IMG/VR virus record: IMGVR_UViG_3300024999_000030
Span: 1 to 64,000 of that record
DNA: 64,000 nt
Reading direction: 5' to 3' (one strand)
Within the stretch, counting starts at the first letter, position 1. Every line of letters starts with the position of its first letter. The notes beneath the pieces were generated by a model, which did not search any database, had not been told where the DNA came from, and saw only the letters and a program-made list of their open reading frames with translations. The position numbers and the translations under genes were made by a program. Positions 16,533 through 33,549 of this stretch are shown in pieces.

Positions 16533-16538
16533 AAATAT

Positions 16539-16620: not shown

Positions 16621-16627
16621 AATATAT

Positions 16628-16705: not shown

Positions 16706-16708
16706 AAT

Positions 16709-16783: not shown

Positions 16784-16791
16784 AAAATTGA

Positions 16792-16885: not shown

Positions 16886-16894
16886 AAAATTTAT

Positions 16895-16971
16895 ACCTTG
16901 GTCACCAAGACGGTAAGGTGTAGTCCTCATAAGACTATTATACGGCAGTTCGAGTCTGCCCCAAGGTACCA
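16895..16971 (+). tRNA. tRNA(CAT): elongator Met or Ile2
   Basis: TAGTC-CTCATAA-GACTA; identity not resolvable by eye. Confidence 0.8.
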
Positions 16972-16973
16972 CT

Positions 16974-17050
16974 GCCGTTAAAGAGGAAGGACACGACTCA
17001 CCTGCCTGTCACGCAGGGGAAAGCCAGTGGAAGTCTGGTTGGCGGCGCCA
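16974..17050 (+). tRNA. tRNA-Asp(GTC)
   Basis: CCTGC-CTGTCAC-GCAGG, G73-CCA. Confidence 0.87.
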
Positions 17051-17055
17051 CTTAT

Positions 17056-17176
17056 GGGTCTATCATCTAATAGGGCCATCCGTGATACTAGAGGTATTTA
17101 GTACATGCAAGGGCGAAAATTAAGATGCTCCCGCAGAAAGGGAGTCATGTGGGTGCAAGTCCCGACGGATCCACCA
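17056..17176 (+). ncRNA. tRNA-like RNA with ~45 nt D-loop insertion and non-canonical anticodon loop
   Basis: D-stem ATCT/AGAT encloses a long hairpin; CTCCC-GCAGAAA-GGGAG; imperfect T/acceptor stems; ends ACCA. Confidence 0.6.
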
Positions 17177-17183
17177 AGTTTAT

Positions 17184-17257
17184 GGGGTAATCGTTTAGTG
17201 CTAGGACGAACGGCTCTCTACCGTTAAACCGGAGTTGAATTCTCCGTTACCCTACCA
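17184..17257 (+). tRNA. tRNA-Glu(CTC)
   Basis: AACGG-CTCTCTA-CCGTT, CCA. Confidence 0.82.
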
Positions 17258-17259
17258 AT

Positions 17260-17338
17260 GGCGTAATCGAATAATATGGACTAATTCGCCAGGCCTTCAC
17301 CCTGGATGATACGGGTTCGATCCCCGTTTACGCTACCA
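17260..17338 (+). tRNA. tRNA-Glu(TTC), C33
   Basis: CCAGG-CCTTCAC-CCTGG; canonical T-loop; CCA. Confidence 0.75.
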
Positions 17339-17339
17339 A

Positions 17340-17368
17340 TTGACAATTCCTATTAATGGAATTATATT
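17340..17368 (+). promoter_or_regulatory. Internal promoter for Val/Ala tRNAs
   Basis: TTGACA-N17-TATATT with CTATTAAT in the spacer. Confidence 0.8.
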
Positions 17369-17387
17369 TATTTCTTAAAAGATTTAT

Positions 17388-17463
17388 GCGCCCTTGGCCT
17401 AGTGGCGAAGGCATCTGGTCTACACCCAGAATATCGGGAGTTCGAGTCTCTCAGGGCGCACCA
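17388..17463 (+). tRNA. tRNA-Val(TAC), C33
   Basis: TCTGG-TCTACAC-CCAGA. Confidence 0.85.
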
Positions 17464-17662: not shown

Positions 17663-20600
17663 GTGTCTAGATTTCTAAATCGTGTGGCTTGGCCACCCCC
17701 ACCCCTATCTATTGAACATGGCGGAACCGGCGCCTCCACTCAACCTGGCGCCGCTAATAATATCTTACCCCCACAGGCTGGCCATAACGGTGACATACTT
17801 TTTACGGATGGTTCTAATGTATCCTGGATTTCCCCTGGTTCTGGAGGAATAGTTACCTCTGTTATAAACTCGGATAGTTCGTTAACTATTTACCCCACCA
17901 TTGGAGACGTTACAGCTAGTATTAATTTAGCCCACTCCAATGTTTGGTCCGCCTCTCAATCTATTGTTCTTGCAGATAGTTCTGCAGCTACTGATTTTTT
18001 AATTAATCCTGCAATTAAAACAAGTGGTAGTTTATTTAAATTACAGGTTAATGATGTAAATAAATTTGTTGTTGATTATGAAGGTAAAATCACATCTGCA
18101 ACATGGAATGGAACTACCATTGAGACCCTTTATGGTGGTACGGGACTTACATCATATTCCAAGGGAGATTTAATATATGCCTCTGCGATCAACACGCTAT
18201 CTCAATTAACTAGTGCGGGCCATTTAGAGGGGCAGGTGTTAAAATTAATAAATTCTGGTGGATCTTTACTCCCAGAATGGTCAACACATAAAGCTTCTGT
18301 GGGCGTGGTGTCTACTCCTTCTCCTAAGTACACTGAGAATTCTGATGGTACCATTACAGTAGATTGCTCCGCAGCGCCTGTGTCAGTAGCATTAAGATCC
18401 ACATCAGACTTCTCAACCCCGATTGTGAGTTACTCTTTAACTGGAAGCTATGGCCCATTCACAATTGTTCCCACGGCGAGGAACTATATATACATCGCCT
18501 ATAATGGTGGGTCTCCGGCTATTTTACATACTACAGATGTTAGTCTCATTAATGAATCTGACTCAACACCCTATATCACAGTGGGTAGAATTGATAAATC
18601 AGGCACGGCAAATATAACCGATGGAGGCGCTGGCACTATTTTAGTGACAGTTACTCCAGCCTTAACCCAGCATGGTTTAGTATCCACTTGGGATGAGGTA
18701 ACGATAGCAGGAGCTGTAGATCTCACATACAATGGAACTTTCACAGTTACCAGGATAGACGCCTATTCTTTTAAGATAACACCACCTTCAGGGTATACTG
18801 CTGATGATACTTGCACCTGGTCCAGCATCGAACTTGACGTATTGGATTGGGACGAGCCTGGCAGTGGTCTTCAAAATAAATTACATCGTAGGTTTGTAAA
18901 AACACAACGATTTGCTAGGGAATCTGGACTTGAATTATCTGAAGACACCGGTAGAGTCGTCGTAGTTCCTACAGGTGTTGCTTGGTATGGTGGCAAAGCC
19001 ATTACGATGGCCGCTACGAGATCTGACACAACTACCTCCCGAACTTACCAGTGGCATCACGTTGGGGGTGTCTGGACAAAAACAATTACCACACAATACA
19101 ACAACAGTCAATTTGATGACGGCACGGACACACAGTCGCTAAGTCCAGGAAGATTTGTAGCTAACTGGATTTACCGGGATGTCAGCGATACGGATAGATG
19201 TCTGCACATCATTTTAGGTCACGGCACAGGCACCGGACACACCGTACTAGAAACAATAGGTGAGGTAGCCCCCACTTCAGCGGAACTTCCACCTGAGATG
19301 AGTGTCACCGCGATGCTGCTTGGAAGGATAATCGCTCGCCAAGGATCAGAGACGGCTGAACAGATAGATAGCGTTTTTGATCTGATAGCCTATCCCTCTG
19401 AGCACATTGTCAAAACCGCTCTTGACACCGTTACAGGCTATGGTGTCGTGTCTGGAATGAGCCTTGCCTCCGATAATGAATCTTGGACTGATTTGGAGAT
19501 AGACGCAGCGGACAACACCAAAATCAAATCCACAGGAAGTACACCCAGAGCGTTCGCCGCAGGAGATATAGGGAAAATCATTACTGTCACCGCAGGAGTA
19601 GGCTTTACCACAGGAGCTTACACCATCACTGCTGGACCAGATCTCAATGGGTTTATGACTCTATCGGGAGCGGTGGGAATAGTTGGTTCGGTGAATGGCT
19701 CAGCCACTATTGCAGCTTTCAAAATCAACTCTGGAGCATATTACACCCCGTCTACTGGAGAAAGATATTACACCACAGAGACCAAAATTGCTCTTCCCAA
19801 TATCTTAACCCACCTCGTTACCTATGTAGCCCTGGATGTCGATGAGACCGTTATACAACATACGAGTCCTTTCACAGATGCTGAGCGCAGATCCCAATTG
19901 TTCTTGGGGGTTGTGGTTCACAGTAATCATATCTCTGTTAATGCGGTCAACAACCTTCCAGATGTTGGCCTCGCCGCACTTTCGCAATATAACGACTTGT
20001 TGGACGCGCTCAAAGGTTTCAATGACAGTGGGAACGATTTTGAGGCTAATGGTGCCAATTTACAAATCAATAAAACAGCCGGTACTCTTTTTAAGCGTGG
20101 TGTCAACTTCGCTAATGATACTACCACCCCTCATGTTATTACTACTGGAGCACTAACTGCCCCAGCTAATCTTCGTTTCCGAACTCAAACTGGTGTAGAG
20201 ACAGCAGATTTAAACTACATAGACAGCGGTTTCTATGATCTCGCTGGTGTGAGGACTGCGGTGTCTCCCGCAGGGCGTTTCCAGATAATGCGGATTGCTC
20301 TATTCCCCTCTAACTTAGTGCGCATCCAATATGGTCAGCAACTTTATGTGAAGATGTCGGATGCTTTCGCAGGTCTTGCAACTGAGCCCTTTGTAGTGGA
20401 ACAGAACATTAATGAGAATGGTCTCTTCAGAGCAATTCTAGTTGTACAAGGGAATGCGACAGCTCTAAATGATTCTACACAAGCCCAGTTTATTATGCTC
20501 AATCGTTTTGGGGACGTTCCTCAAGCTGCGGGAGTAACTGGTGGTGTAGATCTTCAGAGAGCCTATGAAAATTCCTTACCCAATCCTGAGATTCTCACAA

Positions 20601-23600
20601 ATCTCATTAACGGCGCTCTTAATATTCGCAGAGGAACAGCAGCGGATACCGACTCCGTGTGGACCGTGCAGAACAACGCAGGAGATAGTGTAGCGATATT
20701 CGATGCTAACGGTCTTCTCACTTTAGGTGCTGATTTAGCCACCAATGTTCCAGGCTCAATAAAGATGTGGGGGGCAGGAGCTAATTCTTGGTTTACCTCA
20801 TTTATTACTGGAACCCAAACGGCTAATGTTACATATACTTTACCCACAGCAATGCCAACACTAACGGGACAAGCTCTTGTATCTACGGACGCTGGAGTGA
20901 TGAGTTGGGCCACTGTTACAACTCCACCAGCAGGACTAGATACCTACATACAATATAATAATAGTGGAGTTTTTGGCGCTGAAGCAGAATTTACTTATAA
21001 TTATTCTACTAATCTTCTCGCTGTTGGTGAAACTTCTATTTCTTCTAATGTCATTACTATGTTGACATCGGATCCTAAAATTTTCTTACGACATGGTCAA
21101 GGCAATCTTAGTGTTTATTTTAGTGGCTTAGGCTTAAATGATCTTACCGCAAACGGCCCATATATAGGAGCCGAAGGAAGATTAAACACTTATGATTTTA
21201 TTATAGCTATTGACAGTGTCTCTGGTCCAGTGGACACTTTCCAGTGGACAAGTCCCACCAATATTCAGACTTTTGGTGTGGCAATTACTGGTGCCGCCCA
21301 GTACTTAACTGATGGAGTGTCAATTACTTTTGCTTCAACAACTGGACATACACTTGGAGAATATTGGACGATTATTGTAGATAATACTGATCTTTTTCAA
21401 TTAGTAAATGCCGCTGGAACTGTAGCTTTTAATGTGCAAAATGATGGCCGGATTGGTTCTAGTTTACTAAATGCCAGCGGCTTGCCTAGAATTCCTATTT
21501 TAGCTGAGCAAGGATTTGGTTTTACTTGTGCGGGAATGATTCCTGGTGGTGGTTTCCCTGAATATTTTTTATTCGCTACTGTTGGTGATGGCCTAGACAC
21601 AACGCCAGTTTTTAGACTTATGGCCCCGACGAGTTTATCTGATGGCACGCTTATAGACTCTACTTGGTGGACACCAACGGGCGTTCATTTTGCTAATGAT
21701 ATATATTATTCACCTGCTGGTCCGTGGGGCGTAGGAGGAAACACTCCTAAACCCTATGCTACGCAATTTTGGGTGACTTCGCAGGGGTATTTAACTGGCG
21801 CAGGTGGATCAGATACATATGTACAATATAATGCTTCAGGGGTATTAACTGGTGATTCTGGCCTCACTTACCAAGCAGGTACCAGTGATTTGTATGTGGC
21901 CGGATCAATCAGCATAGCAACTTCTGCTGTAATGACACCCAATGTGGCCGATGGAGCTTTGGCAGTAGCTTATTTGTTTGATTCTCTTACTGAATTAACT
22001 AATGCCGCAGGGGCAAAGAACCTTGTCGTAGCTAATGGCACGGTAGAAAAATTTAGTGTCAATCCTCGTCAAACGGTATTAAATACTGAATTAGTTATCC
22101 ATCCTCCTACCTCCACAACAGAGATCTTTGCGGCTCCCTTTTATAATATAGACTCACGAGATTCTAGCGATGTGTCGCGTTTCAAAGTAGATTCCGATGG
22201 CAACGTTACCATGTCCTATGACATAGCCATAGGACCAACCACGTTACTATTAGATGCCCCGCCAGCTAATGGTTTAATTGTCGACACAGATGCTTGGTCT
22301 CCAATTATAGAATTTGAATCCAAATTAGGCGATCAAAGTGCTGTTATGGAATTTGAATCTAAAGTAGGAATGCAAAGTTCGGTAACTGAATTAGAAACTG
22401 CATCCACTAGAACAGTTGTTGTTGGAAGAGATCGAGTTAGATACAATTATGATTATTCAAATAAGATATACACTACTGATAGCACCGATGCTAAAATATA
22501 TGCTACTAATGGAACTATAGCAAAAGTGCAAAGTCAATCTGCACCTAGTAATTCATTACATTTTCTTATAGATAACACGTATGACACACTGATAGATGGA
22601 ACGGGTTATTGGTGGGCAGGTGGGTATCGGGATATTGGTGGTGGACTTGGCAATCCAGGCTTTGTTGTTGACACAACAGCTATAACTTGGTGGGCCGGCA
22701 CAATCTATAATTATATGGATTCTAGTGGTGTTTGGACAACCAACGATGCTGAAACCACATACGCTTGGTTAGATCCAGCGCAGGGACTAAATCTTTATTC
22801 AGATACAATGACTCTTTTAATGGGAGCCACAACTCCATATTTGAAGTTTAATCCTGGAGTAGCCTCTTCTGGTACATCTATTGCTTACTTATTTGACACA
22901 GTAAATAATCTTAATACACCAGGTGATAGACTAGTATCAATACAAAATCAAACGGTAGAAAAATTTAGTATATCAGATACAGATGTGACTAGTTTAGTAC
23001 TTTTCACAGCACCAGATGTATTTGTTGGTGACCTTAATCGCTCAGATGTCACTTATTTTTCAGATCTCAAGATGGCCACTGGTGTGCCCTTCAGCGAACG
23101 CCAGAAGTTTAAAATAGCTGTCACTTATAGTGGTGGAAATGTTACAGCCACTATTTCTTTTGTGGGTGCTTATACAGATTTCAGTTACTATATCAGCGGT
23201 AAGAAGTTTACAGTTACTAGCACTGAATTAGCTGCTTATACAGCCACGACGGCTTCGGCAGAAGGTGTGTGGTTCTTTTATATCAATAATACAACGGTAG
23301 ATGTCGCCGCCCCCGTTATGATTCTCTCTCTCACTCCATGGGTGATTTATGATCCAGATGTTCTGTTGTGGGATTTCTATTTCAACGCATCTGATAATAG
23401 TATTACTTGGGTGGGTGAAGAGCGCCATACGGCAGGCCGAGACATTTTCAATCACGCCAGAAATCATGCTCAAGGTGCACAGTATAAAAATGGATTATTG
23501 ATTAACCACTATAATAATCTGACCACACTTTCTGCAAACACAGATGATAACTTCGGTAGAGCATTAGTGGGAGTATCGAATGGTAGTTTCTATGATGAAG

Positions 23601-25243
23601 ATATTTTCGATTCCATCGCTCATGCGGACACTGCATATACATCTACAGTAGCTGCCCCGGCCACCAACTGGAATCTCATCGTATCTCAATTCTTAGGTTT
23701 TACAGATACAAACAGTTCAGTGGTAGCCGGAACCCTTACCTTTCCCGCTTCTCATACTTTAGTCACAGGACAACCGCTTACAGTGTTTCAGGGTAACACT
23801 ACCACTGTTCGTGGAACGTTTACTGTAACTCTTGGAGGTACTGGTGCCTCATTCTCCGTAACTACAGTTACTGGATCTAACGCTTTTGCTAATAATGATG
23901 TGGTAGTTGTGGGTAGTCGCATTCCCATCTACTATATTTCCTCAGTGGCGGGATCCACATACACTTGGAGGAAGTTAGCCACCACGGAGTTCTTAGGTGT
24001 CTCGGGTGGTGCGGCTTACACTACAGCAAACATAGCTTCCGGCGCAGCACAATATAATGACCCCTCTGTTGGTGGATGGCTCGGAATAACTGCCAATAGG
24101 TACTATCCAGTCTATCTCGCGGCGACCAATAGCACTTCTGAACCAGTCATTGCCATTATGGGCCAGTCATCCTCCACAAGCTCTATTCTAACTACTGTGT
24201 TGACAGAGAACGCATGGAATTATTCGAGTTTAGTGGGCTTGGCTGGTCTTAGTATTCAAGAGGTCGTGCCTTTTTACAGATTGACCTTTTACTATAACAC
24301 CACCGGACTTTTTTCAAACACTCGCATTAAATTAGTGGACGCTATGTTCATCAATATCCGCGTTTCCACTGTTAGCGGTTCAATAGTCGCTCCTGCCTCG
24401 ATCTCTAACCACGCATTACTTACCAACTTAGAATACCCCACATCGGAACACACCTACTTCTTGGGGCAAGATGCGACGTGGACGGCGCCCGTTGTGGGAC
24501 AGATTCCATACGCCTATGATGTGACCGCTCCCACTAAGCCTTTATTCTTAGGTAGTTCTGATTTCATGTGGGCCACAGAGTTGTCGATTACTAAGAACAA
24601 TATCACCACTACATCCACTGACGCCCTCCGATTGAAGAACACTACAGTATCTTTAGTAGGAACTCAAGTACAGCAATCTCCCAATTTAATGTTTGAAAAT
24701 CATGTTTGGGATTTGGATGGGGCAGTAGATGATAAGTGGGAGTGGTTTGTCTACACTAAGGGAACCGCAACTAATATCACAACTAATACAATGTACTTCG
24801 ATGTTAGTAAGAATGATGCAGCAGCTACCACTCCCGCATCTCTCACCTCTGATGGTGCTCTCTATATTAGTAAAGTCATCGGCCCAGTATTTGAGAAAAC
24901 CTTTGGATTTGATGGCGTTCTAGTCACATTCACAGGGGCCCGCAGATGGTATCCGTCAACGGCAATTACAGTAATATCATGCACTGCCTCTGTCAACACA
25001 GCTCCTACTGGTGCCACTGTTTTAGTGGATGTTGATAAAAATATCAATGATGGAGGCGCCACTATATTTACCACTCAAGCTAATAGACCAGAGATAGCGA
25101 TAAGTGGATACGTATCCGCAGCAGAAGTACCAGATATAACATCATTCTTATCTTCAGATTATATGACAGTGGACGTGGATCAGATAGGCTCTACAATAGC
25201 AGGATCTGATATCACCGTCACTATTAGATACACTTATGCGTAA
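17663..25243 (+). CDS. Very large tail fibre/receptor-binding protein (2526 aa)
   Basis: G/T/S-rich beta repeats, repeated GSDTY(I/V)QYN.SG and (I/V)AYLFD...L modules, fibre-type C-terminal domain; AGGAG RBS and CTATTAAT upstream. Confidence 0.75.
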   Translation: MSRFLNRVAWPPPPLSIEHGGTGASTQPGAANNILPPQAGHNGDILFTDGSNVSWISPGSGGIVTSVINSDSSLTIYPTIGDVTASINLAHSNVWSASQSIVLADSSAATDFLINPAIKTSGSLFKLQVNDVNKFVVDYEGKITSATWNGTTIETLYGGTGLTSYSKGDLIYASAINTLSQLTSAGHLEGQVLKLINSGGSLLPEWSTHKASVGVVSTPSPKYTENSDGTITVDCSAAPVSVALRSTSDFSTPIVSYSLTGSYGPFTIVPTARNYIYIAYNGGSPAILHTTDVSLINESDSTPYITVGRIDKSGTANITDGGAGTILVTVTPALTQHGLVSTWDEVTIAGAVDLTYNGTFTVTRIDAYSFKITPPSGYTADDTCTWSSIELDVLDWDEPGSGLQNKLHRRFVKTQRFARESGLELSEDTGRVVVVPTGVAWYGGKAITMAATRSDTTTSRTYQWHHVGGVWTKTITTQYNNSQFDDGTDTQSLSPGRFVANWIYRDVSDTDRCLHIILGHGTGTGHTVLETIGEVAPTSAELPPEMSVTAMLLGRIIARQGSETAEQIDSVFDLIAYPSEHIVKTALDTVTGYGVVSGMSLASDNESWTDLEIDAADNTKIKSTGSTPRAFAAGDIGKIITVTAGVGFTTGAYTITAGPDLNGFMTLSGAVGIVGSVNGSATIAAFKINSGAYYTPSTGERYYTTETKIALPNILTHLVTYVALDVDETVIQHTSPFTDAERRSQLFLGVVVHSNHISVNAVNNLPDVGLAALSQYNDLLDALKGFNDSGNDFEANGANLQINKTAGTLFKRGVNFANDTTTPHVITTGALTAPANLRFRTQTGVETADLNYIDSGFYDLAGVRTAVSPAGRFQIMRIALFPSNLVRIQYGQQLYVKMSDAFAGLATEPFVVEQNINENGLFRAILVVQGNATALNDSTQAQFIMLNRFGDVPQAAGVTGGVDLQRAYENSLPNPEILTNLINGALNIRRGTAADTDSVWTVQNNAGDSVAIFDANGLLTLGADLATNVPGSIKMWGAGANSWFTSFITGTQTANVTYTLPTAMPTLTGQALVSTDAGVMSWATVTTPPAGLDTYIQYNNSGVFGAEAEFTYNYSTNLLAVGETSISSNVITMLTSDPKIFLRHGQGNLSVYFSGLGLNDLTANGPYIGAEGRLNTYDFIIAIDSVSGPVDTFQWTSPTNIQTFGVAITGAAQYLTDGVSITFASTTGHTLGEYWTIIVDNTDLFQLVNAAGTVAFNVQNDGRIGSSLLNASGLPRIPILAEQGFGFTCAGMIPGGGFPEYFLFATVGDGLDTTPVFRLMAPTSLSDGTLIDSTWWTPTGVHFANDIYYSPAGPWGVGGNTPKPYATQFWVTSQGYLTGAGGSDTYVQYNASGVLTGDSGLTYQAGTSDLYVAGSISIATSAVMTPNVADGALAVAYLFDSLTELTNAAGAKNLVVANGTVEKFSVNPRQTVLNTELVIHPPTSTTEIFAAPFYNIDSRDSSDVSRFKVDSDGNVTMSYDIAIGPTTLLLDAPPANGLIVDTDAWSPIIEFESKLGDQSAVMEFESKVGMQSSVTELETASTRTVVVGRDRVRYNYDYSNKIYTTDSTDAKIYATNGTIAKVQSQSAPSNSLHFLIDNTYDTLIDGTGYWWAGGYRDIGGGLGNPGFVVDTTAITWWAGTIYNYMDSSGVWTTNDAETTYAWLDPAQGLNLYSDTMTLLMGATTPYLKFNPGVASSGTSIAYLFDTVNNLNTPGDRLVSIQNQTVEKFSISDTDVTSLVLFTAPDVFVGDLNRSDVTYFSDLKMATGVPFSERQKFKIAVTYSGGNVTATISFVGAYTDFSYYISGKKFTVTSTELAAYTATTASAEGVWFFYINNTTVDVAAPVMILSLTPWVIYDPDVLLWDFYFNASDNSITWVGEERHTAGRDIFNHARNHAQGAQYKNGLLINHYNNLTTLSANTDDNFGRALVGVSNGSFYDEDIFDSIAHADTAYTSTVAAPATNWNLIVSQFLGFTDTNSSVVAGTLTFPASHTLVTGQPLTVFQGNTTTVRGTFTVTLGGTGASFSVTTVTGSNAFANNDVVVVGSRIPIYYISSVAGSTYTWRKLATTEFLGVSGGAAYTTANIASGAAQYNDPSVGGWLGITANRYYPVYLAATNSTSEPVIAIMGQSSSTSSILTTVLTENAWNYSSLVGLAGLSIQEVVPFYRLTFYYNTTGLFSNTRIKLVDAMFINIRVSTVSGSIVAPASISNHALLTNLEYPTSEHTYFLGQDATWTAPVVGQIPYAYDVTAPTKPLFLGSSDFMWATELSITKNNITTTSTDALRLKNTTVSLVGTQVQQSPNLMFENHVWDLDGAVDDKWEWFVYTKGTATNITTNTMYFDVSKNDAAATTPASLTSDGALYISKVIGPVFEKTFGFDGVLVTFTGARRWYPSTAITVISCTASVNTAPTGATVLVDVDKNINDGGATIFTTQANRPEIAISGYVSAAEVPDITSFLSSDYMTVDVDQIGSTIAGSDITVTIRYTYA

Positions 25244-28441: not shown

Positions 28442-28481
28442 CTTGACTTTTTTAAATTATTGTGTTATATTTACAGTGAAT

Positions 28482-28553
28482 GAGAGATTGTGACAGAAAC
28501 GGTTACTTCCCTTTGAATGGATCTAATGTACCGTTTCGAATGCTTCTTCTCTT
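28482..28553 (+). ncRNA. Y RNA-like 1 (minimal)
   Basis: Starts just after promoter 28443-28471; shares GATTGTG..CGGTTACTTC and CCGT..CG..TTCTTC with the next two RNAs; ends pair. Confidence 0.7.
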
Positions 28554-28569
28554 GTTCCACAATTAAAAT

Positions 28570-28722
28570 GCTCCGGCGATTGTGCTAGAGTTCGGTTACT
28601 TCTCCTATTAAGAGAGCGGTCGTGGGTTCGAGTCCCACGGGGTCCATCAAAAACAACACGGGCCCCTAGCTCAGTTGGTAGAGCGCTAAAAAATACCGTA
28701 CTCGACTGTTTCTTCGCTGGGC
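28570..28722 (+). ncRNA. YrlA-type Y RNA with tRNA-mimic module
   Basis: T-arm GTGGG-TTCGAGT-CCCAC, closed acceptor-like helix GGGGTCC/GGGCCCC, then D-arm GCTC-AGTTGGTA-GAGC; upstream of Ro60. Confidence 0.85.
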
Positions 28723-28737
28723 TTAAAAATTAAGCTC

Positions 28738-28812
28738 GGCTCCGATTGTGCTTGAAAACGGTTACTTCTATCATAAGGAATAAACACCGTTTTCGTTAGT
28801 TTCTTCGGGGCC
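28738..28812 (+). ncRNA. Y RNA-like 3 (minimal)
   Basis: GGCTCCG/CGGGGCC terminal stem, same conserved motifs, GAAAACGGT/ACCGTTTTC helix. Confidence 0.72.
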
Positions 28813-28835
28813 TATTTTAATCTAAGGAGAGAAAG

Positions 28836-30221
28836 ATGAAAACTAATAAGAAAACTCATACTGTTGTTCATACCGCTGAAGGCGCCGTTGCAGCTAATAT
28901 TAACGCCAAGCAACAGCTCCGTAGGTCCGTTATGAGCTGCCTCCTTTGGGAGGATTCCTTCTATGAGGAAGGTGTGTCCATTGCTAAGCGTATTACCGAT
29001 TTAGTTAAAAAGGTTGATCCTGAAGATGTAGCTTCGCTCGCTATTGAAGCTCGTGAGGATTTCAAGCTTCGCCATGTTCCATTGCTCTTAGTTCGTGAGC
29101 TTGCTCGTGTGCATAAGGGAGATTCGCTTGTTTCTGATACTTTGGCACGAGTAATTCAGCGTCCAGATGAAATGGGTGAATTTGTAAGCCTTTATTGGAA
29201 AGAGGGAAGACAGCCTTTGTCTATGCAGGTTAGAAAGGGTATTGCTAAGGCCATGGGTAAGTTTAATGAATACTCCTTAGCTAAATATAATTCTTCTAAA
29301 TCTAATATTAAGCTTCGTGATATTCTCCGTTTGGTTCATCCTTCTCCAGTTGGTGATGAACAGACTCGTTTATGGAAGCGTATTTTAACCGATGAATTGG
29401 CTACTCCCGATACTTGGGAAGTTGCTTTGTCTGCTGGTAAGGATAAAAAGGAAACTTGGACTCGCCTTATTGATGAAAATAAGCTTGGTGGATTAGCTTT
29501 TTTACGTAATCTTCGTAACATGGAAACAGCTAAAGTAGATAAGGATATTGTACGTAGGGGCTTTGACCAAATTAATGTTTCTAGGGTTCTGCCTTTCCGT
29601 TTCCTTTCGGCTGCAAATGCTGCTCCTAAGTTTGAAGTTGAACTTGAGAAAGTAATGCTTAAGAGTTTTGAGGGTCGTGAAAAACTTCCTGGCAAGACAT
29701 TGTTTATTGTAGACGTGTCTGGAAGTATGGGCGGTTCGTTATCTCATAAGAGTGAAATGAATCGTCATGATGCAGCGGCAGCTCTTGCCATCGTTGCTCG
29801 TGAGATGTGTGAAGACCCAGTTATTTATGCTACAGCAGGAAACGATATGACTCGCATTCACAAAACTTCTATCGTTCCAGCTCGTCATGGGTTTGCCCTT
29901 AAGGATGCTATTCGTACTCAAGCTAACCAACTTGGTGGTGGAGGCATCTTTCTTAAGCAAGTTATGGACTATGTAAAGAACGCAGAGGGTGAGGCCGATA
30001 GAATTATCGTCATCACTGACGAGCAGGATTGCGACATCAAGCATAAGCCATCTACGGCTCAGCCATTCGGTAGGTATAATTATATGCTTAACGTTTCAGT
30101 AGAGAAGAACGGTATCGGCTACGGGCAGTGGACTCACATCGACGGTTTCTCTGAGGCTGTATTAGATTTCATTCTTCTTAGTGAGAAGGAAAACGAGCAG
30201 GAGATATGTCAGACTAACTAA
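28836..30221 (+). CDS. rsr: Ro60/Rsr TROVE-vWA RNA-binding protein
   Basis: L+R.VMSCLLWE..FYE, AREDFKLRHVPL, PDTWEV.LS, LRNLRNM, VDVSGSM MIDAS, ITDEQ. Confidence 0.92.
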   Translation: MKTNKKTHTVVHTAEGAVAANINAKQQLRRSVMSCLLWEDSFYEEGVSIAKRITDLVKKVDPEDVASLAIEAREDFKLRHVPLLLVRELARVHKGDSLVSDTLARVIQRPDEMGEFVSLYWKEGRQPLSMQVRKGIAKAMGKFNEYSLAKYNSSKSNIKLRDILRLVHPSPVGDEQTRLWKRILTDELATPDTWEVALSAGKDKKETWTRLIDENKLGGLAFLRNLRNMETAKVDKDIVRRGFDQINVSRVLPFRFLSAANAAPKFEVELEKVMLKSFEGREKLPGKTLFIVDVSGSMGGSLSHKSEMNRHDAAAALAIVAREMCEDPVIYATAGNDMTRIHKTSIVPARHGFALKDAIRTQANQLGGGGIFLKQVMDYVKNAEGEADRIIVITDEQDCDIKHKPSTAQPFGRYNYMLNVSVEKNGIGYGQWTHIDGFSEAVLDFILLSEKENEQEICQTN

Positions 30222-30243
30222 GACTGTCACTTGCTCGGTATTT

Positions 30244-30276
30244 AAGGCCCCGGGTAAGTTTTCCCGGGGCTTTTTT
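30244..30276 (+). terminator. Terminator after Ro60
   Basis: GCCCCGGG/CCCGGGGC plus TTTTTT. Confidence 0.85.
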
Positions 30277-30280
30277 ACTT

Positions 30281-30374
30281 GCGGGAGTCGTCCAGCGGCC
30301 AGGACAGCGGTCTTATAAGCCGCCTCGCTCCAGATTAGAGCAAAACGGGGGTTCGAGTCCCTCCTCCCGCACCA
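30281..30374 (+). tRNA. tRNA-Ile(TAT) with ~23 nt variable arm
   Basis: GCGGT-CTTATAA-GCCGC; GCTC/GAGC hairpin in V-region; CCA. Confidence 0.82.
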
Positions 30375-30428
30375 AATACGGCCCTCCGATTCTATATCAA
30401 TACTCAACCATAGAATCGGAGGGCCATT

Positions 30429-30731
30429 ATGTCTACTAAGAAACCAGGTCCAGGCACTTTCCCAATGTGGGAAAACAGGATTGTCATTAAGAGGAAGATT
30501 TTTTGTTGGACATGGAATGTCTCAATTCCAGGCGCAACTGATACAGTTTTCTCTCAATTCGCTCTAGCTATGAAGGCTCTTGAGGACCATGGATATAAAG
30601 TATATGATATAGACACTTTTCCGTATCGCAAGGATGAAATTGGTCAAGTTACTGTGGTCGGAACGTTTAAAGTGAAGCGTCATTTTCTTTGGAGAGGCGA
30701 AATCCTAGCGACATATGTTGGGGAGGGCTGA
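30429..30731 (+). CDS. Hypothetical protein; RBS sequestered in a 16 bp hairpin
   Basis: 100 aa ORF; GGAGGG inside inverted repeat 30380-30425. Confidence 0.6.
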   Translation: MSTKKPGPGTFPMWENRIVIKRKIFCWTWNVSIPGATDTVFSQFALAMKALEDHGYKVYDIDTFPYRKDEIGQVTVVGTFKVKRHFLWRGEILATYVGEG

Positions 30732-30743
30732 ATTTAATTTGAC

Positions 30744-30772
30744 TTGACTTTCTTCTATTAATATATTATATT
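30744..30772 (+). promoter_or_regulatory. Promoter of tRNA operon 3
   Basis: TTGACT-N17-TATATT with CTATTAAT in the spacer. Confidence 0.85.
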
Positions 30773-30787
30773 ATTTGAGAGAGGACG

Positions 30788-30883
30788 ATGAATATGTTTA
30801 CCCAAGGAACCCCTAAACCACAGACAAGAACATACCAACGCTATTGCGGTAGGTATGTGCAAAATTTGGGGGCTTTGTCCTAA
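30788..30883 (+). CDS. Attenuator leader peptide 3 MNMFTQGTPKPQTRTYQRYCGRYVQNLGALS
   Basis: GAGG RBS; codons 5-23 consist only of T,Q,G,P,K,R,Y,C, matching the downstream tRNAs. Confidence 0.9.
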   Translation: MNMFTQGTPKPQTRTYQRYCGRYVQNLGALS

Positions 30884-30907
30884 GTATCTGTATCGCGGTT
30901 CAAAGAC

Positions 30908-30934
30908 AAGCCCCCGAGAAATCGGGGGCTTTTT
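30908..30934 (+). terminator. Attenuator terminator 3
   Basis: AAGCCCCCGA-GAAA-TCGGGGGCTT plus U-tract; alternative pairing GGGGGCTTTGTC (30868) with GACAAGCCCCC. Confidence 0.88.
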
Positions 30935-30948
30935 ATTTAAAGAAAAAC

Positions 30949-31038
30949 GGGTCCGTCACCTAGTGGCCGAGGGTTCCAGCCTTTTAAGCTGGCGAGGTTT
31001 TACCTCCACCGTTGGTTCAAATCCAACCGGTCCCACCA
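30949..31038 (+). tRNA. tRNA-Lys(TTT) with long variable arm
   Basis: CCAGC-CTTTTAA-GCTGG; GAGG/CCTC V-arm. Confidence 0.85.
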
Positions 31039-31049
31039 AATATAATTTT

Positions 31050-31130
31050 GCCTCCGTAGCTCAGTCGCGTTAAGTAGCATCCGGCTCTTACCCGGAAGGT
31101 CGCAGTCATCGCAAGCTGCCGAGGGCACCA
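31050..31130 (+). tRNA. tRNA-Lys(CTT)
   Basis: TCCGG-CTCTTAC-CCGGA; atypical T-loop. Confidence 0.8.
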
Positions 31131-31137
31131 AAAAAGT

Positions 31138-31215
31138 CTGGGTGTAGCTCAGTCTGGCCAGAGCATCGCGTTTGGGACGCGAGGGTCGGGGGTCCGAATC
31201 CCTCCACCCAGACCA
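31138..31215 (+). tRNA. tRNA-Pro(TGG)
   Basis: C1-G72, A73, TCGCG-TTTGGGA-CGCGA. Confidence 0.92.
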
Positions 31216-31226
31216 AAGGAGATAAA

Positions 31227-31925
31227 ATGCCAGTGTGCGTTCTTTGTCATGCGGAGTTTCCAAATAGGCAGCGAATAGACGATAAGATTAGAAATTTAAA
31301 AAATAGGAAGCTTTGTTTAAAATGCTCTCCGTTTGGAGAACACACTCAGGCTCATAATTTATTGCCCAGAAAGAGAAATTTTACAGACGATCAGTTTATG
31401 GAGGCGGTAAAAAATAATATCACTATTAAGGCTGTGTTGTTGCAGCTTAAATTAAGCCCGAGAGGAAATAATTATAAATTAGTACATAGGCTAGTGGAAC
31501 AATTTAATTTAGACGTATCTCATTGGAGTGTGGAGTTATCAAACTCTAATACTATGAAGAAGAAGTACTTAAGTATTAAAAGGGATGCGTCAAAAATCTT
31601 ATGTTTGGGGAGCACAACCGGTCGGCGAGCGGTTAAGGCGTGTCTCTTGAGAACTGGAGTCAAAAACGAATGTGCAATGTGCCATTTATCTGTGTGGCAA
31701 GGCCAGCCACTGTCTTTGCAGCTACACCATATTAATGGTCAATGGGATGACAACAGAGAAAATAATTTGCTGTTACTATGCCCAAATTGTCACTCTTTGA
31801 CAGATACGTTTTGTGGCAAGAAGAACGAAACAATTAATAAAGCTTGTGCTTGTGGTGCTCGCATAAAAAGTAAAAGTACACAGTGTGTGAAGTGTTACAA
31901 GGGGAGTCGTAAATTAGGTAAATAA
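31227..31925 (+). CDS. HNH homing endonuclease within tRNA operon 3
   Basis: CAMC....WQGQPLSLQLHHING...DNRENNL.LLCPNCHSLT. Confidence 0.88.
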   Translation: MPVCVLCHAEFPNRQRIDDKIRNLKNRKLCLKCSPFGEHTQAHNLLPRKRNFTDDQFMEAVKNNITIKAVLLQLKLSPRGNNYKLVHRLVEQFNLDVSHWSVELSNSNTMKKKYLSIKRDASKILCLGSTTGRRAVKACLLRTGVKNECAMCHLSVWQGQPLSLQLHHINGQWDDNRENNLLLLCPNCHSLTDTFCGKKNETINKACACGARIKSKSTQCVKCYKGSRKLGK

Positions 31926-31926
31926 T

Positions 31927-32002
31927 GTCCTTATAGCTCAATGTATAGAGCGTCTGGCTACGGACCAGAAGGTTGGGGGTTAGAGTCCTCCTAGGGACAC
32001 CA
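31927..32002 (+). tRNA. tRNA-Arg(ACG)
   Basis: TCTGG-CTACGGA-CCAGA; A20. Confidence 0.9.
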
Positions 32003-32005
32003 AAT

Positions 32006-32093
32006 GGTGGGGCGGCAGCGACGGTGAGCTGCAAGTGGCTGTAACCCACTCGCCTTAATGGCTTAGGGAGTTCGAATCTCTCCCCCACCACCA
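32006..32093 (+). tRNA. tRNA-Tyr(GTA)
   Basis: AGTGG-CTGTAAC-CCACT, long V-arm. Confidence 0.9.
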
Positions 32094-32102
32094 ATAATAT
32101 AC

Positions 32103-32188
32103 TGAGGAGTGGCCCAATTGGCAGGGCACGGGGCTTTGGACCCCGCGTGGTCTCCACATTGAAGGTTCGAGTCCTTCCTCCTCAGCCA
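32103..32188 (+). tRNA. tRNA-Gln(TTG) with long variable arm
   Basis: U1-A72, CGGGG-CTTTGGA-CCCCG, GTGG/CCAC V-arm. Confidence 0.85.
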
Positions 32189-32194
32189 AAATAT

Positions 32195-32280
32195 GCAGGA
32201 GTCCCCTAGTGCTCGATGGGACCGCACTTGTAATGCGGCGGCGAAAGCCCACGTGGGTTGAAATCCCACCTCCTGCTCCA
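32195..32280 (+). tRNA. tRNA-Thr(TGT) with extended variable arm
   Basis: CCGCA-CTTGTAA-TGCGG; GGC-GAAA-GCC. Confidence 0.85.
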
Positions 32281-32288
32281 GCGCTTAT

Positions 32289-32364
32289 GGATCAGTGGCG
32301 AAGTGTTAAACGCGACCGCCTGCAGAGCGGTTTATCGGGGGTTAAAATCCCTCCTGGTCCTCCA
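32289..32364 (+). tRNA. tRNA-Cys(GCA)
   Basis: ACCGC-CTGCAGA-GCGGT, U73. Confidence 0.9.
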
Positions 32365-32374
32365 AAAAATTTGA

Positions 32375-32462
32375 TGGGGAGTCGCGTAGCGGCCTAGCGC
32401 ATCGGTCTCTGGAACCGACAGAGGAAACTCTAACGAAGGTTCGAATCCTTCCTCCCCTGCCA
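32375..32462 (+). tRNA. tRNA-Gln(CTG) with long variable arm
   Basis: TCGGT-CTCTGGA-ACCGA; AGAG-GAAA-CTCT. Confidence 0.85.
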
Positions 32463-32464
32463 AT

Positions 32465-32538
32465 GAGGATTTGGTATAGTGCTCGTGCCCTCGGTTGCCT
32501 GCCGAGAGAGGCGGGTTGGATTCCCGCAATCCTCTCCA
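32465..32538 (+). tRNA. tRNA-Gly(GCC)
   Basis: CTCGG-TTGCCTG-CCGAG, U73. Confidence 0.85.
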
Positions 32539-32551
32539 ATTGGAGAATATA

Positions 32552-33223
32552 ATGATTAAAATAAAATTCACGTGTGAATATTGTGGAGTTGAAGGCGAAA
32601 GGCGAAAATCAGATTACAATCGAGCTAAACATCATTATTGCTCTCATAAGTGCAGTGTAAAGGCTTCGGATTCTATTGTCTACACAGAATGTGCTTTTTG
32701 TAGAAAGCAATTAATATTAAAAAGAAATAAGGTTAGGGCAAAAGCTAGAGTGTTTTGTTCTCATTCTTGTGCCTCTAAAATGATAAATGTGGAGCGAGGT
32801 GGAAAACTAAGGAAGGGAGAAATTAACTGTAGCTATTGTGGAAAAAAATTGGCCGGGGAGCAATTCAAATATTGCTCTATTTCTTGCCAACACCAACATA
32901 TCTATTCAAATTTTATTAAAGCCTGGCAAGATGGAATAGTTTCTGGTTCCACGGCAAATGGAGGTGTCGCCTCGACCATTAGAAAGTATTTACATGATAA
33001 ATATGGATGTAGGTGCGCCATATGTGGATGGAATAAAATTAATCCACATACACATAAAATCCCACTGCAAGTCCATCATATTGATGGAAATTCTCATAAT
33101 GCCAGTGAAGATAATCTTATTTTGATTTGTCCGAATTGTCACAGTTTAACTGATAAATTTGGCGCCAGAAACAAGGGGAACGGTAGAGACTCAAGAAGAA
33201 TACGAAGAGCTAATCAAAAATAA
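32552..33223 (+). CDS. HNH homing endonuclease with Zn-ribbon repeats, within tRNA operon 3
   Basis: GGAG RBS; repeated CxxC...YCS..C; CAICGW...LQVHHIDGN..NA..DNL.LICPNCHSLT. Confidence 0.88.
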   Translation: MIKIKFTCEYCGVEGERRKSDYNRAKHHYCSHKCSVKASDSIVYTECAFCRKQLILKRNKVRAKARVFCSHSCASKMINVERGGKLRKGEINCSYCGKKLAGEQFKYCSISCQHQHIYSNFIKAWQDGIVSGSTANGGVASTIRKYLHDKYGCRCAICGWNKINPHTHKIPLQVHHIDGNSHNASEDNLILICPNCHSLTDKFGARNKGNGRDSRRIRRANQK

Positions 33224-33297
33224 GCTTCCATAGTGTAGCACCAACACGACAGTCTTCCAAACTGTAATCGCGGGTGGGACTCCCGCTGGAAGCTCCA
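33224..33297 (+). tRNA. tRNA-Gly(TCC)
   Basis: ACAGT-CTTCCAA-ACTGT, U73. Confidence 0.88.
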
Positions 33298-33300
33298 AAT

Positions 33301-33379
33301 GTCCTCATGGCGCAAATGTATAGCGCGAGAGTTTCTCCTAAACTCTAGGCTGGGGGTTAGAGTCCCTCTGAGGACACCA
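33301..33379 (+). tRNA. tRNA-Arg(CCT)-like with 9 nt anticodon loop
   Basis: Body resembles Arg(ACG) at 31927 (A20); AGAGT-TTCTCCTAA-ACTCT. Confidence 0.72.
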
Positions 33380-33382
33380 AAT

Positions 33383-33465
33383 GTCAGTGTAGACGAGGTG
33401 GTCTTCTAAACCACTATTCGTAATTGGATCTGAAAATGTGGGTTCAAGTCCCACCGCTGACACCA
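33383..33465 (+). tRNA. tRNA-Arg(TCT) with rearranged D-domain
   Basis: Intact acceptor, anticodon (GTGGT-CTTCTAA-ACCAC) and T arms; only 8 nt before the anticodon stem; D-loop-like AATTGGAT lies 3' of it. Confidence 0.75.
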
Positions 33466-33472
33466 AATTTTT

Positions 33473-33549
33473 GCAGGCTTCGTATAGTCGTACTAGTACG
33501 CTAGTTTCGTAAACTAGAAACGGTGGATAATAGCCGCCAGCCTGCTCCA
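33473..33549 (+). tRNA. tRNA-Thr(CGT)
   Basis: CTAGT-TTCGTAA-ACTAG; atypical T-loop ATAATAG. Confidence 0.8.

What the first reader, a model, noticed from the sequence alone, without database searches (positions are those of the whole stretch)
28443..30221. Phage Ro60 operon with three tandem Y RNA-like genes, one YrlA-type tRNA mimic and two minimal forms
Three ~70-150 nt units share GATTGTG-N5-7-CGGTTACTTC and CCGT-N3-CG-N4-5-TTCTTC with paired ends, all under one promoter and directly before a TROVE/vWA gene. The middle unit carries T-arm, closed acceptor-like helix and D-arm in the YrlA order. Established: bacterial Ro60 genes lie next to Y RNAs, YrlA mimics tRNA, Ro60 RNPs are linked to RNA decay (PNPase) and RNA-repair loci, and a few phages encode them. 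Three copies with interchangeable effector domains, placed between tRNA operons, suggest a role in tRNA damage response or decoying.
Basis: partly seen in the sequence, partly recalled or inferred. Interest (0 to 1): 0.7.

Follow-up and report, generated by a model that had tools for sequence, protein, structure and literature searches.

The report
Phage Ro60 gene with three Y RNAs
A 333-kb groundwater phage carries a gene for the ring-shaped RNA-binding protein Ro60 preceded by three small structured "Y RNA" genes, one of which mimics a tRNA; this is a correct reading of the sequence, and a layout that turns out to be usual for a large group of phages.

Summary
Window 28443-30277 is one compact unit: a sigma70-like promoter, three structured RNA modules (U1 28478-28557, U2 28572-28721, U3 28738-28812), a Ro60 gene (28836-30221) and a terminator hairpin. 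The protein is Ro60: it has a TROVE domain and a vWA domain with an intact MIDAS motif, and its model matches solved Ro60 rings.

All three RNAs share a lower stem, a bulged U, an internal loop, an upper helix and an invariant UACUUC. That structure is kept by compensatory changes in 65 units from about 25 related phage loci. U2 also carries V, T, closed acceptor-like and D arms in YrlA order, with the Levitt pair. It scores below Rfam's YrlA threshold (41 bits against 69).

The layout is not special to this phage. Arrays of 2-8 such units flank Ro60 in most relatives, including Caulobacter phage CcrColossus, Xanthomonas phage Tenjo, Bacillus phage G and crAss001, and are unannotated in the GenBank records inspected.

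Expression, Ro60 binding and function could not be tested. RtcB is encoded 235 kb away, and no PNPase was found.

Verdict: a new member of a known kind, of moderate interest.

The parts
28443..28471 (+). Sigma70-like promoter: TTGACT, 17-nt spacer, TATATT, with TG upstream of the -10 box. The predicted start is at about 28478, the first base of U1.
   Evidence: 10 of 12 consensus positions, extended -10. A similarly placed promoter sits 5-8 nt before the first stem base in 7 related loci. This is a consensus match only; it has not been shown to be active.
28478..28557 (+). U1, a short Y RNA-like unit of 80 nt. From outside in: 10-bp lower stem, bulged U, U.U plus G-C, internal loop, upper helix, CGGUUACUUC (28500-28509), small apical region.
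   Evidence: z -2.9. R1 covariance model 52.4 bits, E 3e-12.
28558..28571 (+). AU-rich single-stranded spacer between U1 and U2 (CACAAUUAAAAUGC); candidate endonuclease processing site.
   Evidence: Read directly from the sequence. Processing is inferred.
28572..28721 (+). U2, a YrlA-type unit of 150 nt. It has the same docking stem as U1 and U3, plus a tRNA-like domain.
   Evidence: Rfam YrlA 41 bits, E 1e-7. R1 27.9 bits, E 6e-5. Fold z -2.7. Aligned with 13 homologous long units.
28602..28614 (+). V hairpin of U2: CUC, loop CUAUUAA, GAG. The 7-nt loop resembles an anticodon loop and begins with YUAY.
   Evidence: Read. Chen 2014 describes the V arm and YUAY. ARAGORN reads this hairpin as an anticodon arm in relatives.
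28622..28638 (+). T arm of U2: 5-bp stem with loop UUCGAGU.
   Evidence: 4 of its 5 pairs show compensatory changes among the 16 aligned long-type units.
28639..28666 (+). Acceptor-like stem of U2: 7 bp (GGGGUCC with GGGCCCC), closed by a 14-nt loop.
   Evidence: All 7 pairs show compensatory changes in relatives.
28667..28684 (+). U8-A9 followed by the D arm of U2: GCUC, loop AGUUGGUA, GAGC.
   Evidence: G15 with C48 (28621) forms the Levitt pair, which covaries as G:C or A:U in 13 of 14 long units.
28722..28737 (+). AU-rich spacer between U2 and U3.
   Evidence: Read directly from the sequence.
28738..28812 (+). U3, a short Y RNA-like unit of 75 nt. It has the same docking stem; its apical region is a 4-bp hairpin.
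   Evidence: z -5.0; 0 of 200 shuffles fold as well. R1 47.3 bits, E 1e-10.
28824..30221 (+). Ribosome-binding site AAGGAG (28824-28829) and Ro60 coding sequence (28836-30221, 461 aa): TROVE domain plus vWA domain with MIDAS residues D293, S295 and S297.
   Evidence: Pfam TROVE E 7e-23, with vWA_Ro60 27.5 bits just under its 27.7 cutoff. phrog_850 E 9e-48. Sequence match to phiLo Ro60 structure 9KOP, E 9e-26. AF2 model pLDDT 84, TM 0.72 to 9KOP and 0.61-0.68 to the other solved Ro60 chains (phiLo dimer, Xenopus, human, Deinococcus). The MIDAS residues are invariant in 26 homologues.
30244..30277 (+). Intrinsic-terminator-like hairpin (11 pairs, 8 G-C) followed by a T run; closes the unit.
30281..33549 (+). 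Context: the second block of the tRNA island (13 tRNA genes) starts 4 nt after the terminator. The first block lies at 11061-17463.

Best explanation
This is a phage-encoded Ro60/Y RNA ribonucleoprotein cassette.

Inferred from consensus sites: host RNA polymerase starts at about 28478 and reads U1, U2, U3 and the Ro60 mRNA as one transcript that ends at the 30244 hairpin. Host endonucleases then cut in the AU-rich spacers and release three small RNAs.

Inferred by homology: each RNA docks on the Ro60 ring through the same conserved module. That module is a lower stem, a bulged U, two pairs, and an internal loop. The loop's 5' strand (clade consensus GG-Y-G-A-A-G) is the counterpart of the canonical bacterial GNCGAA(N)G motif.

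The three RNAs differ only in the apical 'effector' part. They should therefore give three kinds of Ro60 particle with different partners. U2 presents a near-complete, circularly permuted tRNA shape (V, T, closed 7-bp acceptor, D) to tRNA-recognising host or phage proteins. Candidates are modification enzymes, RNase P, the CCA-adding enzyme and PNPase. U1 and U3 are minimal gate or tether forms like YrlB.

Known systems are Deinococcus and Salmonella RYPER, and Thermus phage phiLo. By analogy, the particles most likely capture or redirect a host 3'-5' exoribonuclease (PNPase) and structured RNAs during infection. In this phage, which carries 29 tRNA genes of its own, the targets probably include tRNA surveillance and turnover.

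Shown here by computation: the protein fold, the RNA structures and their covariation, the co-orientation with Ro60, and the conservation of the arrangement. Not shown: transcription, processing, binding, partners and phenotype.
For: Protein: TROVE plus vWA. The full-length model matches solved Ro60 rings from phage phiLo, Xenopus, human and Deinococcus. The MIDAS residues are invariant.

Shared RNA module: RNAalifold on 26 short units finds 14 of 15 pairs with compensatory changes. On 65 units, 92.7% of cells are paired against 44-52% when partners are slid. The covariation score is 1.00 against 0.22 or less, and 0 of 500 shuffles reach it.

tRNA-like domain: 27 of 31 pairs show compensatory changes. 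The Levitt pair covaries in 13 of 14 long units. YrlA is the only real Rfam hit.

Association with Ro60: all 65 hits at E of 0.001 or below in the window and the 27 related viral loci lie on the Ro60 strand. Units are found in 25 of those 27 viral loci, in 6 of 7 MAG loci, and in CcrColossus, Tenjo, a crAss-like phage, crAss001 and phage G. No units occur elsewhere in this genome.

Operon signals: one promoter, no internal terminator, and a terminal hairpin. The promoter is placed at the first stem base in 8 loci.

[quoted passage not shown] Phage phiLo Ro60 binds two upstream Yrl RNAs and host PNPase (PMC12135203).
Against: There is no expression evidence. None of the RNA runs listed holds the locus, and the three small metatranscriptomes from the same study gave no reads.

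U2 scores 41 bits against YrlA's gathering score of 69.

The canonical GNCGAA motif is degenerate in all three window units (UGUGAC or UGUGCU). One position that is Watson-Crick paired in 62 of 65 related units is U.U in all three.

The phage encodes no PNPase, so any exonuclease partner must come from an unknown host.

RtcB is 235 kb away and is missing from 4 of 5 cultured phages with the same arrangement. A fixed link to RNA repair is therefore not supported.

The complex predictor does not fold protein-RNA jobs, so no binding test was obtained.
Confidence: 0.85

Rival explanations
1. The three structured units are cis-acting leader elements of the Ro60 mRNA, for example sites where Ro60 binds its own 5' UTR to control translation or stability. 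On this view they are not released, trans-acting small RNAs.
For: U3 ends only 23 nt before the start codon. No promoter-like or terminator-like site separates the units from the gene, so they are very probably on the same primary transcript.
Against: In relatives the same units lie downstream of Ro60 (L021, L023, L028, L031, L032, L044, crAss001). In others they lie 2.3-2.8 kb away, directly abutting tRNA genes (L025, L027, L029). A 5' leader role cannot explain that. In M. smegmatis, co-transcribed YrlA and YrlB are processed into stable Ro60-bound RNAs. The two roles do not exclude each other.
Confidence: 0.07
2. The main job of the tRNA-like unit is to act as a decoy or sensor for host tRNA-targeting defences (anticodon nucleases, tRNA-cleaving toxins) or for tRNA-repair enzymes. 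Ro60 would serve mainly to stabilise it. This is a sub-case of the main explanation with a different effector logic.
For: The locus sits inside the phage's tRNA island. The V hairpin has a 7-nt loop of anticodon-loop form (Y-U-NNN-R-A), and ARAGORN reads it as an anticodon arm in six relatives. The 7-bp acceptor-like stem is the feature that made M. smegmatis YrlA an RNase P and CCA-addition substrate. The genome encodes RtcB and two adjacent matches to the PolyA_pol family, which includes CCA-adding enzymes.
Against: The V stem is only 3-4 bp, and the loop sequence is not conserved as any one anticodon. Short units without any tRNA-like part are at least as common. RtcB is absent from 4 of 5 cultured phages with the arrays. 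The 44-kb phage Tenjo has four units without a large tRNA island nearby.
Confidence: 0.15
3. The units are decayed tRNA genes or selfish repeats with no function tied to Ro60.
For: They lie in a tRNA-rich region, and U2 contains tRNA-like arms.
Against: The non-tRNA docking stem is conserved by compensatory change across phages whose Ro60 proteins are only 23-59% identical. The units track the Ro60 gene, always on its strand. The arm order T, acceptor, D is permuted in the same way in all long units.
Confidence: 0.02

Closest known systems
Mycobacterium smegmatis rsr locus (YrlA and YrlB upstream of rsr; Chen et al. 2014, PMC4201824)
   Same: Y RNAs lie upstream of Ro60 on the same strand and are made from one precursor. 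One is tRNA-like with a 7-bp acceptor-like stem, and the others are shorter. The T, AS, D and V arms and the Levitt pair are present.
   Different: This locus has three units rather than two. The host is a phage. The 5' motif is degenerate (UGUGAC or UGUGCU instead of GNCGAA). [quoted passage not shown]
Salmonella Typhimurium rsr-yrlBA-rtcBA operon and the RYPER complex (Ro60, Y RNA, PNPase)
   Same: Ro60 is paired with one YrlA-type and one or more short Y RNAs. The genome also has RtcB.
   Different: Here RtcB is 235 kb away, and neither RtcA nor PNPase was found. The Y RNAs lie upstream of Ro60. Rfam's YrlA model, which is built on such sequences, scores only 41 bits.
Thermus phage phiLo Ro60 with Yrl1 and Yrl2 (PMC12135203; PDB 9KOP, 9L5Y)
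   Same: It is the nearest solved structure (E 9e-26, TM 0.72). It is phage-encoded, has Y-like RNAs upstream of the gene, and the phage has no PNPase.
   Different: The proteins are only about 24-28% identical. The phiLo RNAs carry CGAA and were not found by the R1 model. No tRNA-like unit has been reported there.
Caulobacter phage CcrColossus gp139 locus (also Bacillus phage G, Xanthomonas phage Tenjo, crAss001 gp96)
   Same: Same Ro60 clade (44-49% identity; 23% for phage G) and same docking-stem module with UACUUC. Tandem arrays are present: about 8 units in CcrColossus, 4 in Tenjo, 4 in phage G. The literature lists YrlA-like RNAs for CcrColossus and phage G.
   Different: The numbers and order of units differ. 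In crAss001 the units lie downstream of the gene. The window's three units share a private variant (AUUGUG and UUUCUUC, with U.U).
Deinococcus radiodurans Rsr with Yrn1 and Yrn2
   Same: Several Y RNAs are encoded next to Ro60. Ro60 docks on the stem, and the effector loop tethers PNPase.
   Different: Yrn1 has only a T-arm-like part. There is no sequence or Rfam-level similarity to the window's units.

Membership tests
Ro60 / TROVE protein family | TROVE domain | tested here: met
   PF05731 E 7e-23, 82 bits against a cutoff of 23. phrog_850 E 9e-48 over the full length.
Ro60 / TROVE protein family | C-terminal vWA domain with a MIDAS motif (DxSxS) | tested here: met
   vWA_Ro60 scores 27.5 bits, just under its 27.7 cutoff. 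D293, S295 and S297 are invariant in 26 homologues. The model shows a vWA fold (ranks 14-18).
Ro60 / TROVE protein family | Ring (HEAT-repeat doughnut) architecture like solved Ro60 structures | tested here: met
   AF2 model pLDDT 84.2. Foldseek full-length matches to 9KOP (TM 0.72), 2NVO (0.66), human Ro60 (0.67) and 1YVP (0.63), with E 1e-19 to 1e-11. This is a predicted model, not a solved structure.
YrlA (Rfam RF02553; Chen et al. 2014) | Reaches the Rfam gathering score | tested here: not met
   41 bits against 69, E 1e-7 in a 551-nt search; nothing at gathering in the whole window. All clade relatives also score 33-56 bits.
YrlA (Rfam RF02553; Chen et al. 2014) | Encoded near a Ro60 gene on the same strand | tested here: met
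   U2 ends 115 nt before the Ro60 start codon, on the + strand.
YrlA (Rfam RF02553; Chen et al. 2014) | Conserved T and D stem-loops with an intervening acceptor-like stem-loop, in the order T, AS, D | tested here: met
   T 28622-28638, AS 28639-28666, D 28669-28684. Covariation is seen in 14 homologous long units.
YrlA (Rfam RF02553; Chen et al. 2014) | V stem-loop upstream of T, with a loop beginning YUAY | tested here: met
   CUC-CUAUUAA-GAG at 28602-28614; the loop starts CUAU. The stem changes in a compensatory way among relatives by eye, but it was not scored formally because MAFFT shifts the register.
YrlA (Rfam RF02553; Chen et al. 2014) | Levitt pair 15:48 possible and covarying | tested here: met
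   G15:C48 in U2. Across 14 long units: 8 G:C, 5 A:U, 1 exception.
YrlA (Rfam RF02553; Chen et al. 2014) | GNCGAA(N0-1)G motif near the 5' end (presumed Ro60 contact) | tested here: not met
   Window units read UGUGACAG, UGUGCUAG and UGUGCUUG at the collinear place. Relatives have GGCGAAG (exact; L008, L009, L011, L024) or GGUGAAG (one change) there. The position is therefore homologous, but the window's version is degenerate.
YrlA (Rfam RF02553; Chen et al. 2014) | Bound by Ro60; carries tRNA modifications (pseudouridine 55, dihydrouridine) | not testable with these tools
   The complex predictor does not fold protein-RNA jobs. No RNA data are available.
Short bacterial Y RNAs (YrlB / Yrn2 type) | Long hairpin made by the 5' and 3' ends, with the Ro60-binding stem and a small pyrimidine-rich loop | tested here: inconclusive
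   U1 and U3 form the long hairpin with the shared docking stem. Their apical regions are not notably pyrimidine-rich. No matching model turned up in the Rfam scan. They work like YrlB, but homology is not shown.
Metazoan Y RNA (Rfam RF00019) | Match to the family model | tested here: not met
   No hit even at E of 10 or below.

The most novel reading that the evidence does not exclude
Phage Ro60 genes come with modular arrays of Y RNAs. A constant, covarying docking stem carries swappable effector cassettes: a permuted tRNA shape, a T-arm-only form, UUCG or GAAA tetraloop hairpins, or minimal loops. There are 2-8 units per locus. They often abut tRNA genes and start exactly at a host-type promoter. 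This has not been described as a system, the units are missing from the GenBank records inspected, and the tRNA-like units score below Rfam's YrlA threshold. If so, Ro60 would be a hub that a phage aims at several host RNA-handling machines at once. The tRNA-shaped unit could then act as a decoy or adaptor in the conflict over tRNAs.
Probability: 0.3. Interest if true: 0.6.

Novelty: new member of a known kind. Interest (0 to 1): 0.4.

Why it matters
What a virus uses Ro60/Y RNA particles for is unknown, although they are studied from bacteria to humans, where Ro60 is a lupus and Sjogren autoantigen.

This locus adds a clean example: one promoter, three Y RNAs with one shared docking stem and three different heads, in a 333-kb phage with its own tRNA set.

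The more useful outcome is comparative. The same covarying module is present in tandem arrays in cultured, tractable phage-host pairs: CcrColossus with Caulobacter, Tenjo with Xanthomonas, phage G with Bacillus, and crAss001 with Bacteroides. Binding, processing, partners and infection phenotype can therefore be tested at the bench.

The work also flags an annotation problem. These RNAs are unannotated in the GenBank records inspected. In CcrColossus an annotated tRNA-Gln lies inside one unit, and ARAGORN mis-calls others as tRNAs.

Tried and rejected
- Megablast of the locus against 50,697 phage records found no match. tblastn with the protein was needed.
- MAFFT on the three window units alone misaligned U2's 3' half. 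I built the model from short units of relatives instead.
- cmscan placed Rfam's 5' 'cggCgaAUG' on the window's CGGUUACUU. I first took GGUUACUUC as a replacement for the GNCGAA motif. I rejected that after seeing GGCGAAG and GGUGAAG at the lower internal loop of relatives. In Gordonia phage VanLee, GGUUACUUC aligns with Rfam's 'gGgaaCUAc', so the architecture is collinear with canonical YrlA.
- Expression: both run searches listed only groundwater DNA runs that hold the locus. Three small SOLiD metatranscriptomes of the same study gave no reads. This is no evidence either way.
- Complex prediction with Ro60 and U3 was not folded, because the tool gives no verdict for RNA. This is not evidence.
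- A fixed RNA-repair link is not supported. RtcB is present but distant. RtcA and the Rnl2-type RNA-ligase family were not found; the Rnl1 model also found nothing, but it hit none of the 14 control genomes either, so that search says nothing. RtcB occurs in only 1 of 5 cultured relatives.
- No PNPase or RNase PH domain is encoded in the phage.
- TAG recoding, suggested by a tRNA with a CUA anticodon: crude ORF coverage gives no support.
- The supplementary tables of Chen 2014 are not held, and the 2020 Annual Review is not held. I therefore could not check whether multi-unit phage arrays were tabulated there.
Full report
WHAT IS THERE

The window is the first 64 kb of a 332,730-bp IMG/VR virus record rated complete. 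The DNA runs that hold it are groundwater metagenomes. The window also encodes a tail-fibre-like protein and a peptidase.

Between a 59-aa ORF that ends at 28441 and an ORF that starts at 28836 lie 394 non-coding bases. They hold no ORF of 40 aa or more on either strand.

The ORF at 28836-30221 (461 aa) is a Ro60 protein:
- It matches Pfam TROVE (E 7e-23) and the Ro60 vWA domain.
- It matches phrog_850 over its full length (E 9e-48).
- Its nearest solved relative by sequence is Thermus phage phiLo Ro60 (E 9e-26).
- An AlphaFold model built on 26 homologues (pLDDT 84) superposes full-length on phiLo, Deinococcus, Xenopus and human Ro60 (TM 0.61-0.72).
- The MIDAS residues D293, S295 and S297 are invariant across those homologues.

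CHECK OF THE OBSERVATION

The 5' motif occurs nowhere else in the genome. Two spacings needed small corrections: N7-8 rather than N5-7 in the 5' motif, and N2-3 and N5 in the 3' motif.

I set the unit boundaries by hand from the pairing: U1 28478-28557 (80 nt), U2 28572-28721 (150 nt), U3 28738-28812 (75 nt). Each folds with paired ends and folds better than its shuffles (z -2.9, -2.7 and -5.0).

A sigma70-like promoter (TTGACT, 17 nt, TATATT, with an extended -10 TG) ends 6 nt before U1's first base. No other + strand promoter-like site and no terminator-like site lies between it and the gene. A strong hairpin with a T run follows the stop codon at 30244. The spacers between units are AU-rich and unpaired.

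COMPARATIVE EVIDENCE FOR THE RNA STRUCTURES

The Ro60 protein retrieved 27 further viral loci at 43-59% identity, plus one that is the same sequence. Their flanks hold many units of the same build.

An alignment of 26 short units gives a consensus structure with these parts, from outside in:
- a 6-bp lower stem
- a bulged U
- two further pairs
- an internal loop
- a 7-bp upper helix
- an invariant UACUUC
14 of the 15 pairs show compensatory changes.

A covariance model of this alignment (R1) finds exactly three places in the window and no others in the genome. It finds 62 more in the relatives at E of 0.001 or below, all on the Ro60 strand.

On the 65 aligned units, 92.7% of cells are paired, against 44-52% when the partners are slid. 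The covariation score is 1.00 against 0.22 or less. All 15 pairs have double changes. That alignment was fitted to the model, which favours the structure. The independent MAFFT/RNAalifold result says the same.

THE tRNA-LIKE UNIT

U2 is the only match of substance to any Rfam family. It matches YrlA at 41 bits, E 1e-7, below the gathering score of 69.

Aligned with 13 long units from relatives, the following are all kept by compensatory change (27 of 31 pairs):
- the T arm
- a 7-bp closed acceptor-like stem immediately after it
- U8-A9
- the D arm
The Levitt pair is G15:C48 or A15:U48 in 13 of 14 units. Chen et al. 2014 used this feature to argue for a tRNA-like fold.

A small hairpin 5' of the T arm (28602-28614) corresponds to their V arm, and its loop begins with YUAY. 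The loop has seven bases of anticodon-loop form. ARAGORN therefore calls the 5' half of such units a tRNA in six relatives.

RELATION TO THE CANONICAL Y RNA BINDING SITE

I first thought the clade lacked the GNCGAA(N)G motif. It does not. At the 5' side of the lower internal loop, relatives read GGCGAAG or GGUGAAG. In Gordonia phage VanLee, GGUUACUUC aligns with Rfam's GGGAACUAC. The build is therefore collinear with canonical YrlA.

The window's three units are the divergent ones. They read UGUGAC or UGUGCU at this place. They also have U opposite U at a position that is G-C or A-U in the other 62 units. All three units of one phage share this private variant. That fits either co-adaptation to one partner (its Ro60) or gene conversion among tandem copies. 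I cannot separate the two.

HOW COMMON THE LAYOUT IS

Nearly all relatives have two or more units. Examples:
- L012 has short-long-short, like the window.
- L010 and L016 have long-short-short.
- L022 has five units.
- L018 has eight.

The same module lies next to Ro60 in six MAG contigs and in cultured phages:
- CcrColossus has about eight units in the 1.2 kb before gp139.
- Tenjo has four.
- Bacillus phage G has four, although its Ro60 is only 23% identical to the window's.
- crAss001 and a crAss-like relative have units downstream of the gene.

R1 found none at E of 1 or below near phiLo, VanLee or RsoM2USA. VanLee does have YrlA hits.

None of these units is annotated as a Y RNA in the GenBank records I inspected. 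Published work already lists Y-like RNAs for mycobacteriophages, CcrColossus and phage G. [quoted passage not shown] It also notes TROVE proteins in some jumbo phages. I found no description of the arrays as such, but key reviews and supplements are not held.

CONTEXT AND FUNCTION

26 of the 29 tRNA genes lie at 11,061-33,549, so the cassette is inside the tRNA island. In several relatives the units directly abut tRNA genes.

The genome's RNA-handling inventory is:
- RtcB at 264,121-265,227
- two adjacent matches to the PolyA_pol family, which includes CCA-adding enzymes
- no PNPase, RtcA or Rnl2-type ligase found; the Rnl1 search was uninformative because the model hit no control genome
RtcB is present in only one of five cultured phages with the arrays.

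I therefore favour the general Ro60 mechanism: a docking stem on the ring, with an effector head that recruits or blocks a host exoribonuclease or tRNA-handling protein. Precedents are RYPER complexes and phiLo. A fixed RNA-repair role is less well supported. A tRNA-decoy role for U2 is possible but untested.

A pure 5'-leader role is unlikely. In relatives the units also lie downstream of Ro60 or kilobases away from it.

LIMITS

No transcript data exist for this phage. The complex predictor does not handle RNA. Transcription, processing, binding and phenotype are all inferences.

VERDICT

The locus is a new member of a known kind and is typical of its phage clade. Its main value is the comparative picture and the testable cultured relatives. 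Interest 0.4.

Noticed in passing
window 30281-30374, 30949-31038, 32103-32188, 32195-32280, 32375-32462, 16792-16885: Phage tRNAs for Ile(UAU), Lys, Gln (two), Thr and Met are 86-94 nt long. The five drawn with ARAGORN (all but the second Gln, 32375-32462) have long, class-II-like variable arms and an encoded CCA end. In bacteria only Leu, Ser and Tyr tRNAs normally have such arms.
   Followed up: partly
window 14708-14783: A tRNA with a CUA anticodon (amber-suppressor type; ARAGORN labels it 'Pyl'). Crude stop-to-stop ORF coverage shows no genome-wide gain from reading TAG as sense.
   Followed up: partly
window 17663-25243: A 2526-aa ORF between the two tRNA blocks has no Pfam hit at E of 0.001 or below.
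   Followed up: no
L046 (Caulobacter phage CcrColossus NC_019406.1) 207-1408: About eight Y RNA-type units lie upstream of gp139 and are unannotated. The annotated 'tRNA-Gln' D866_gt024 (L046 622-689) lies inside one unit (614-786), and ARAGORN does not call it. It is probably a mis-annotated YrlA-type module.
   Followed up: partly
L053 (Bacteroides phage crAss001 NC_049977.1) 2851-3755: The roughly 900-nt unannotated gap after the Ro60 gene gp96 holds at least two Y RNA-type units (2944-3033 and 3517-3668). It also holds a 144-nt Rfam tRNA match (3124-3267) that ARAGORN does not call.
   Followed up: partly
L018 554-1538: An uncultured phage contig carries eight tandem units before its Ro60 gene. 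They include two full tRNA-like units, two T-arm-only forms and four short forms. This matches CcrColossus (about 8 units) as the largest arrays seen.
   Followed up: partly
L021 2391-2742; L031 365-668; L032 503-810; L014 2124-2196: tmRNA-like genes lie within a few kb of the Ro60/Y RNA loci of several related phage contigs.
   Followed up: no
genome G000:286161-287316: Two adjacent matches to the PolyA_pol (CCA-adding or poly(A) polymerase type) nucleotidyltransferase domain. One lies in an open frame of 1185 aa.
   Followed up: no
window 32495-33223: An HNH-endonuclease-like ORF sits inside the tRNA block, between tRNA-Gly(GCC) and tRNA-Gly(UCC). The Pfam hit is weak and just under its cutoff.
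   Followed up: no
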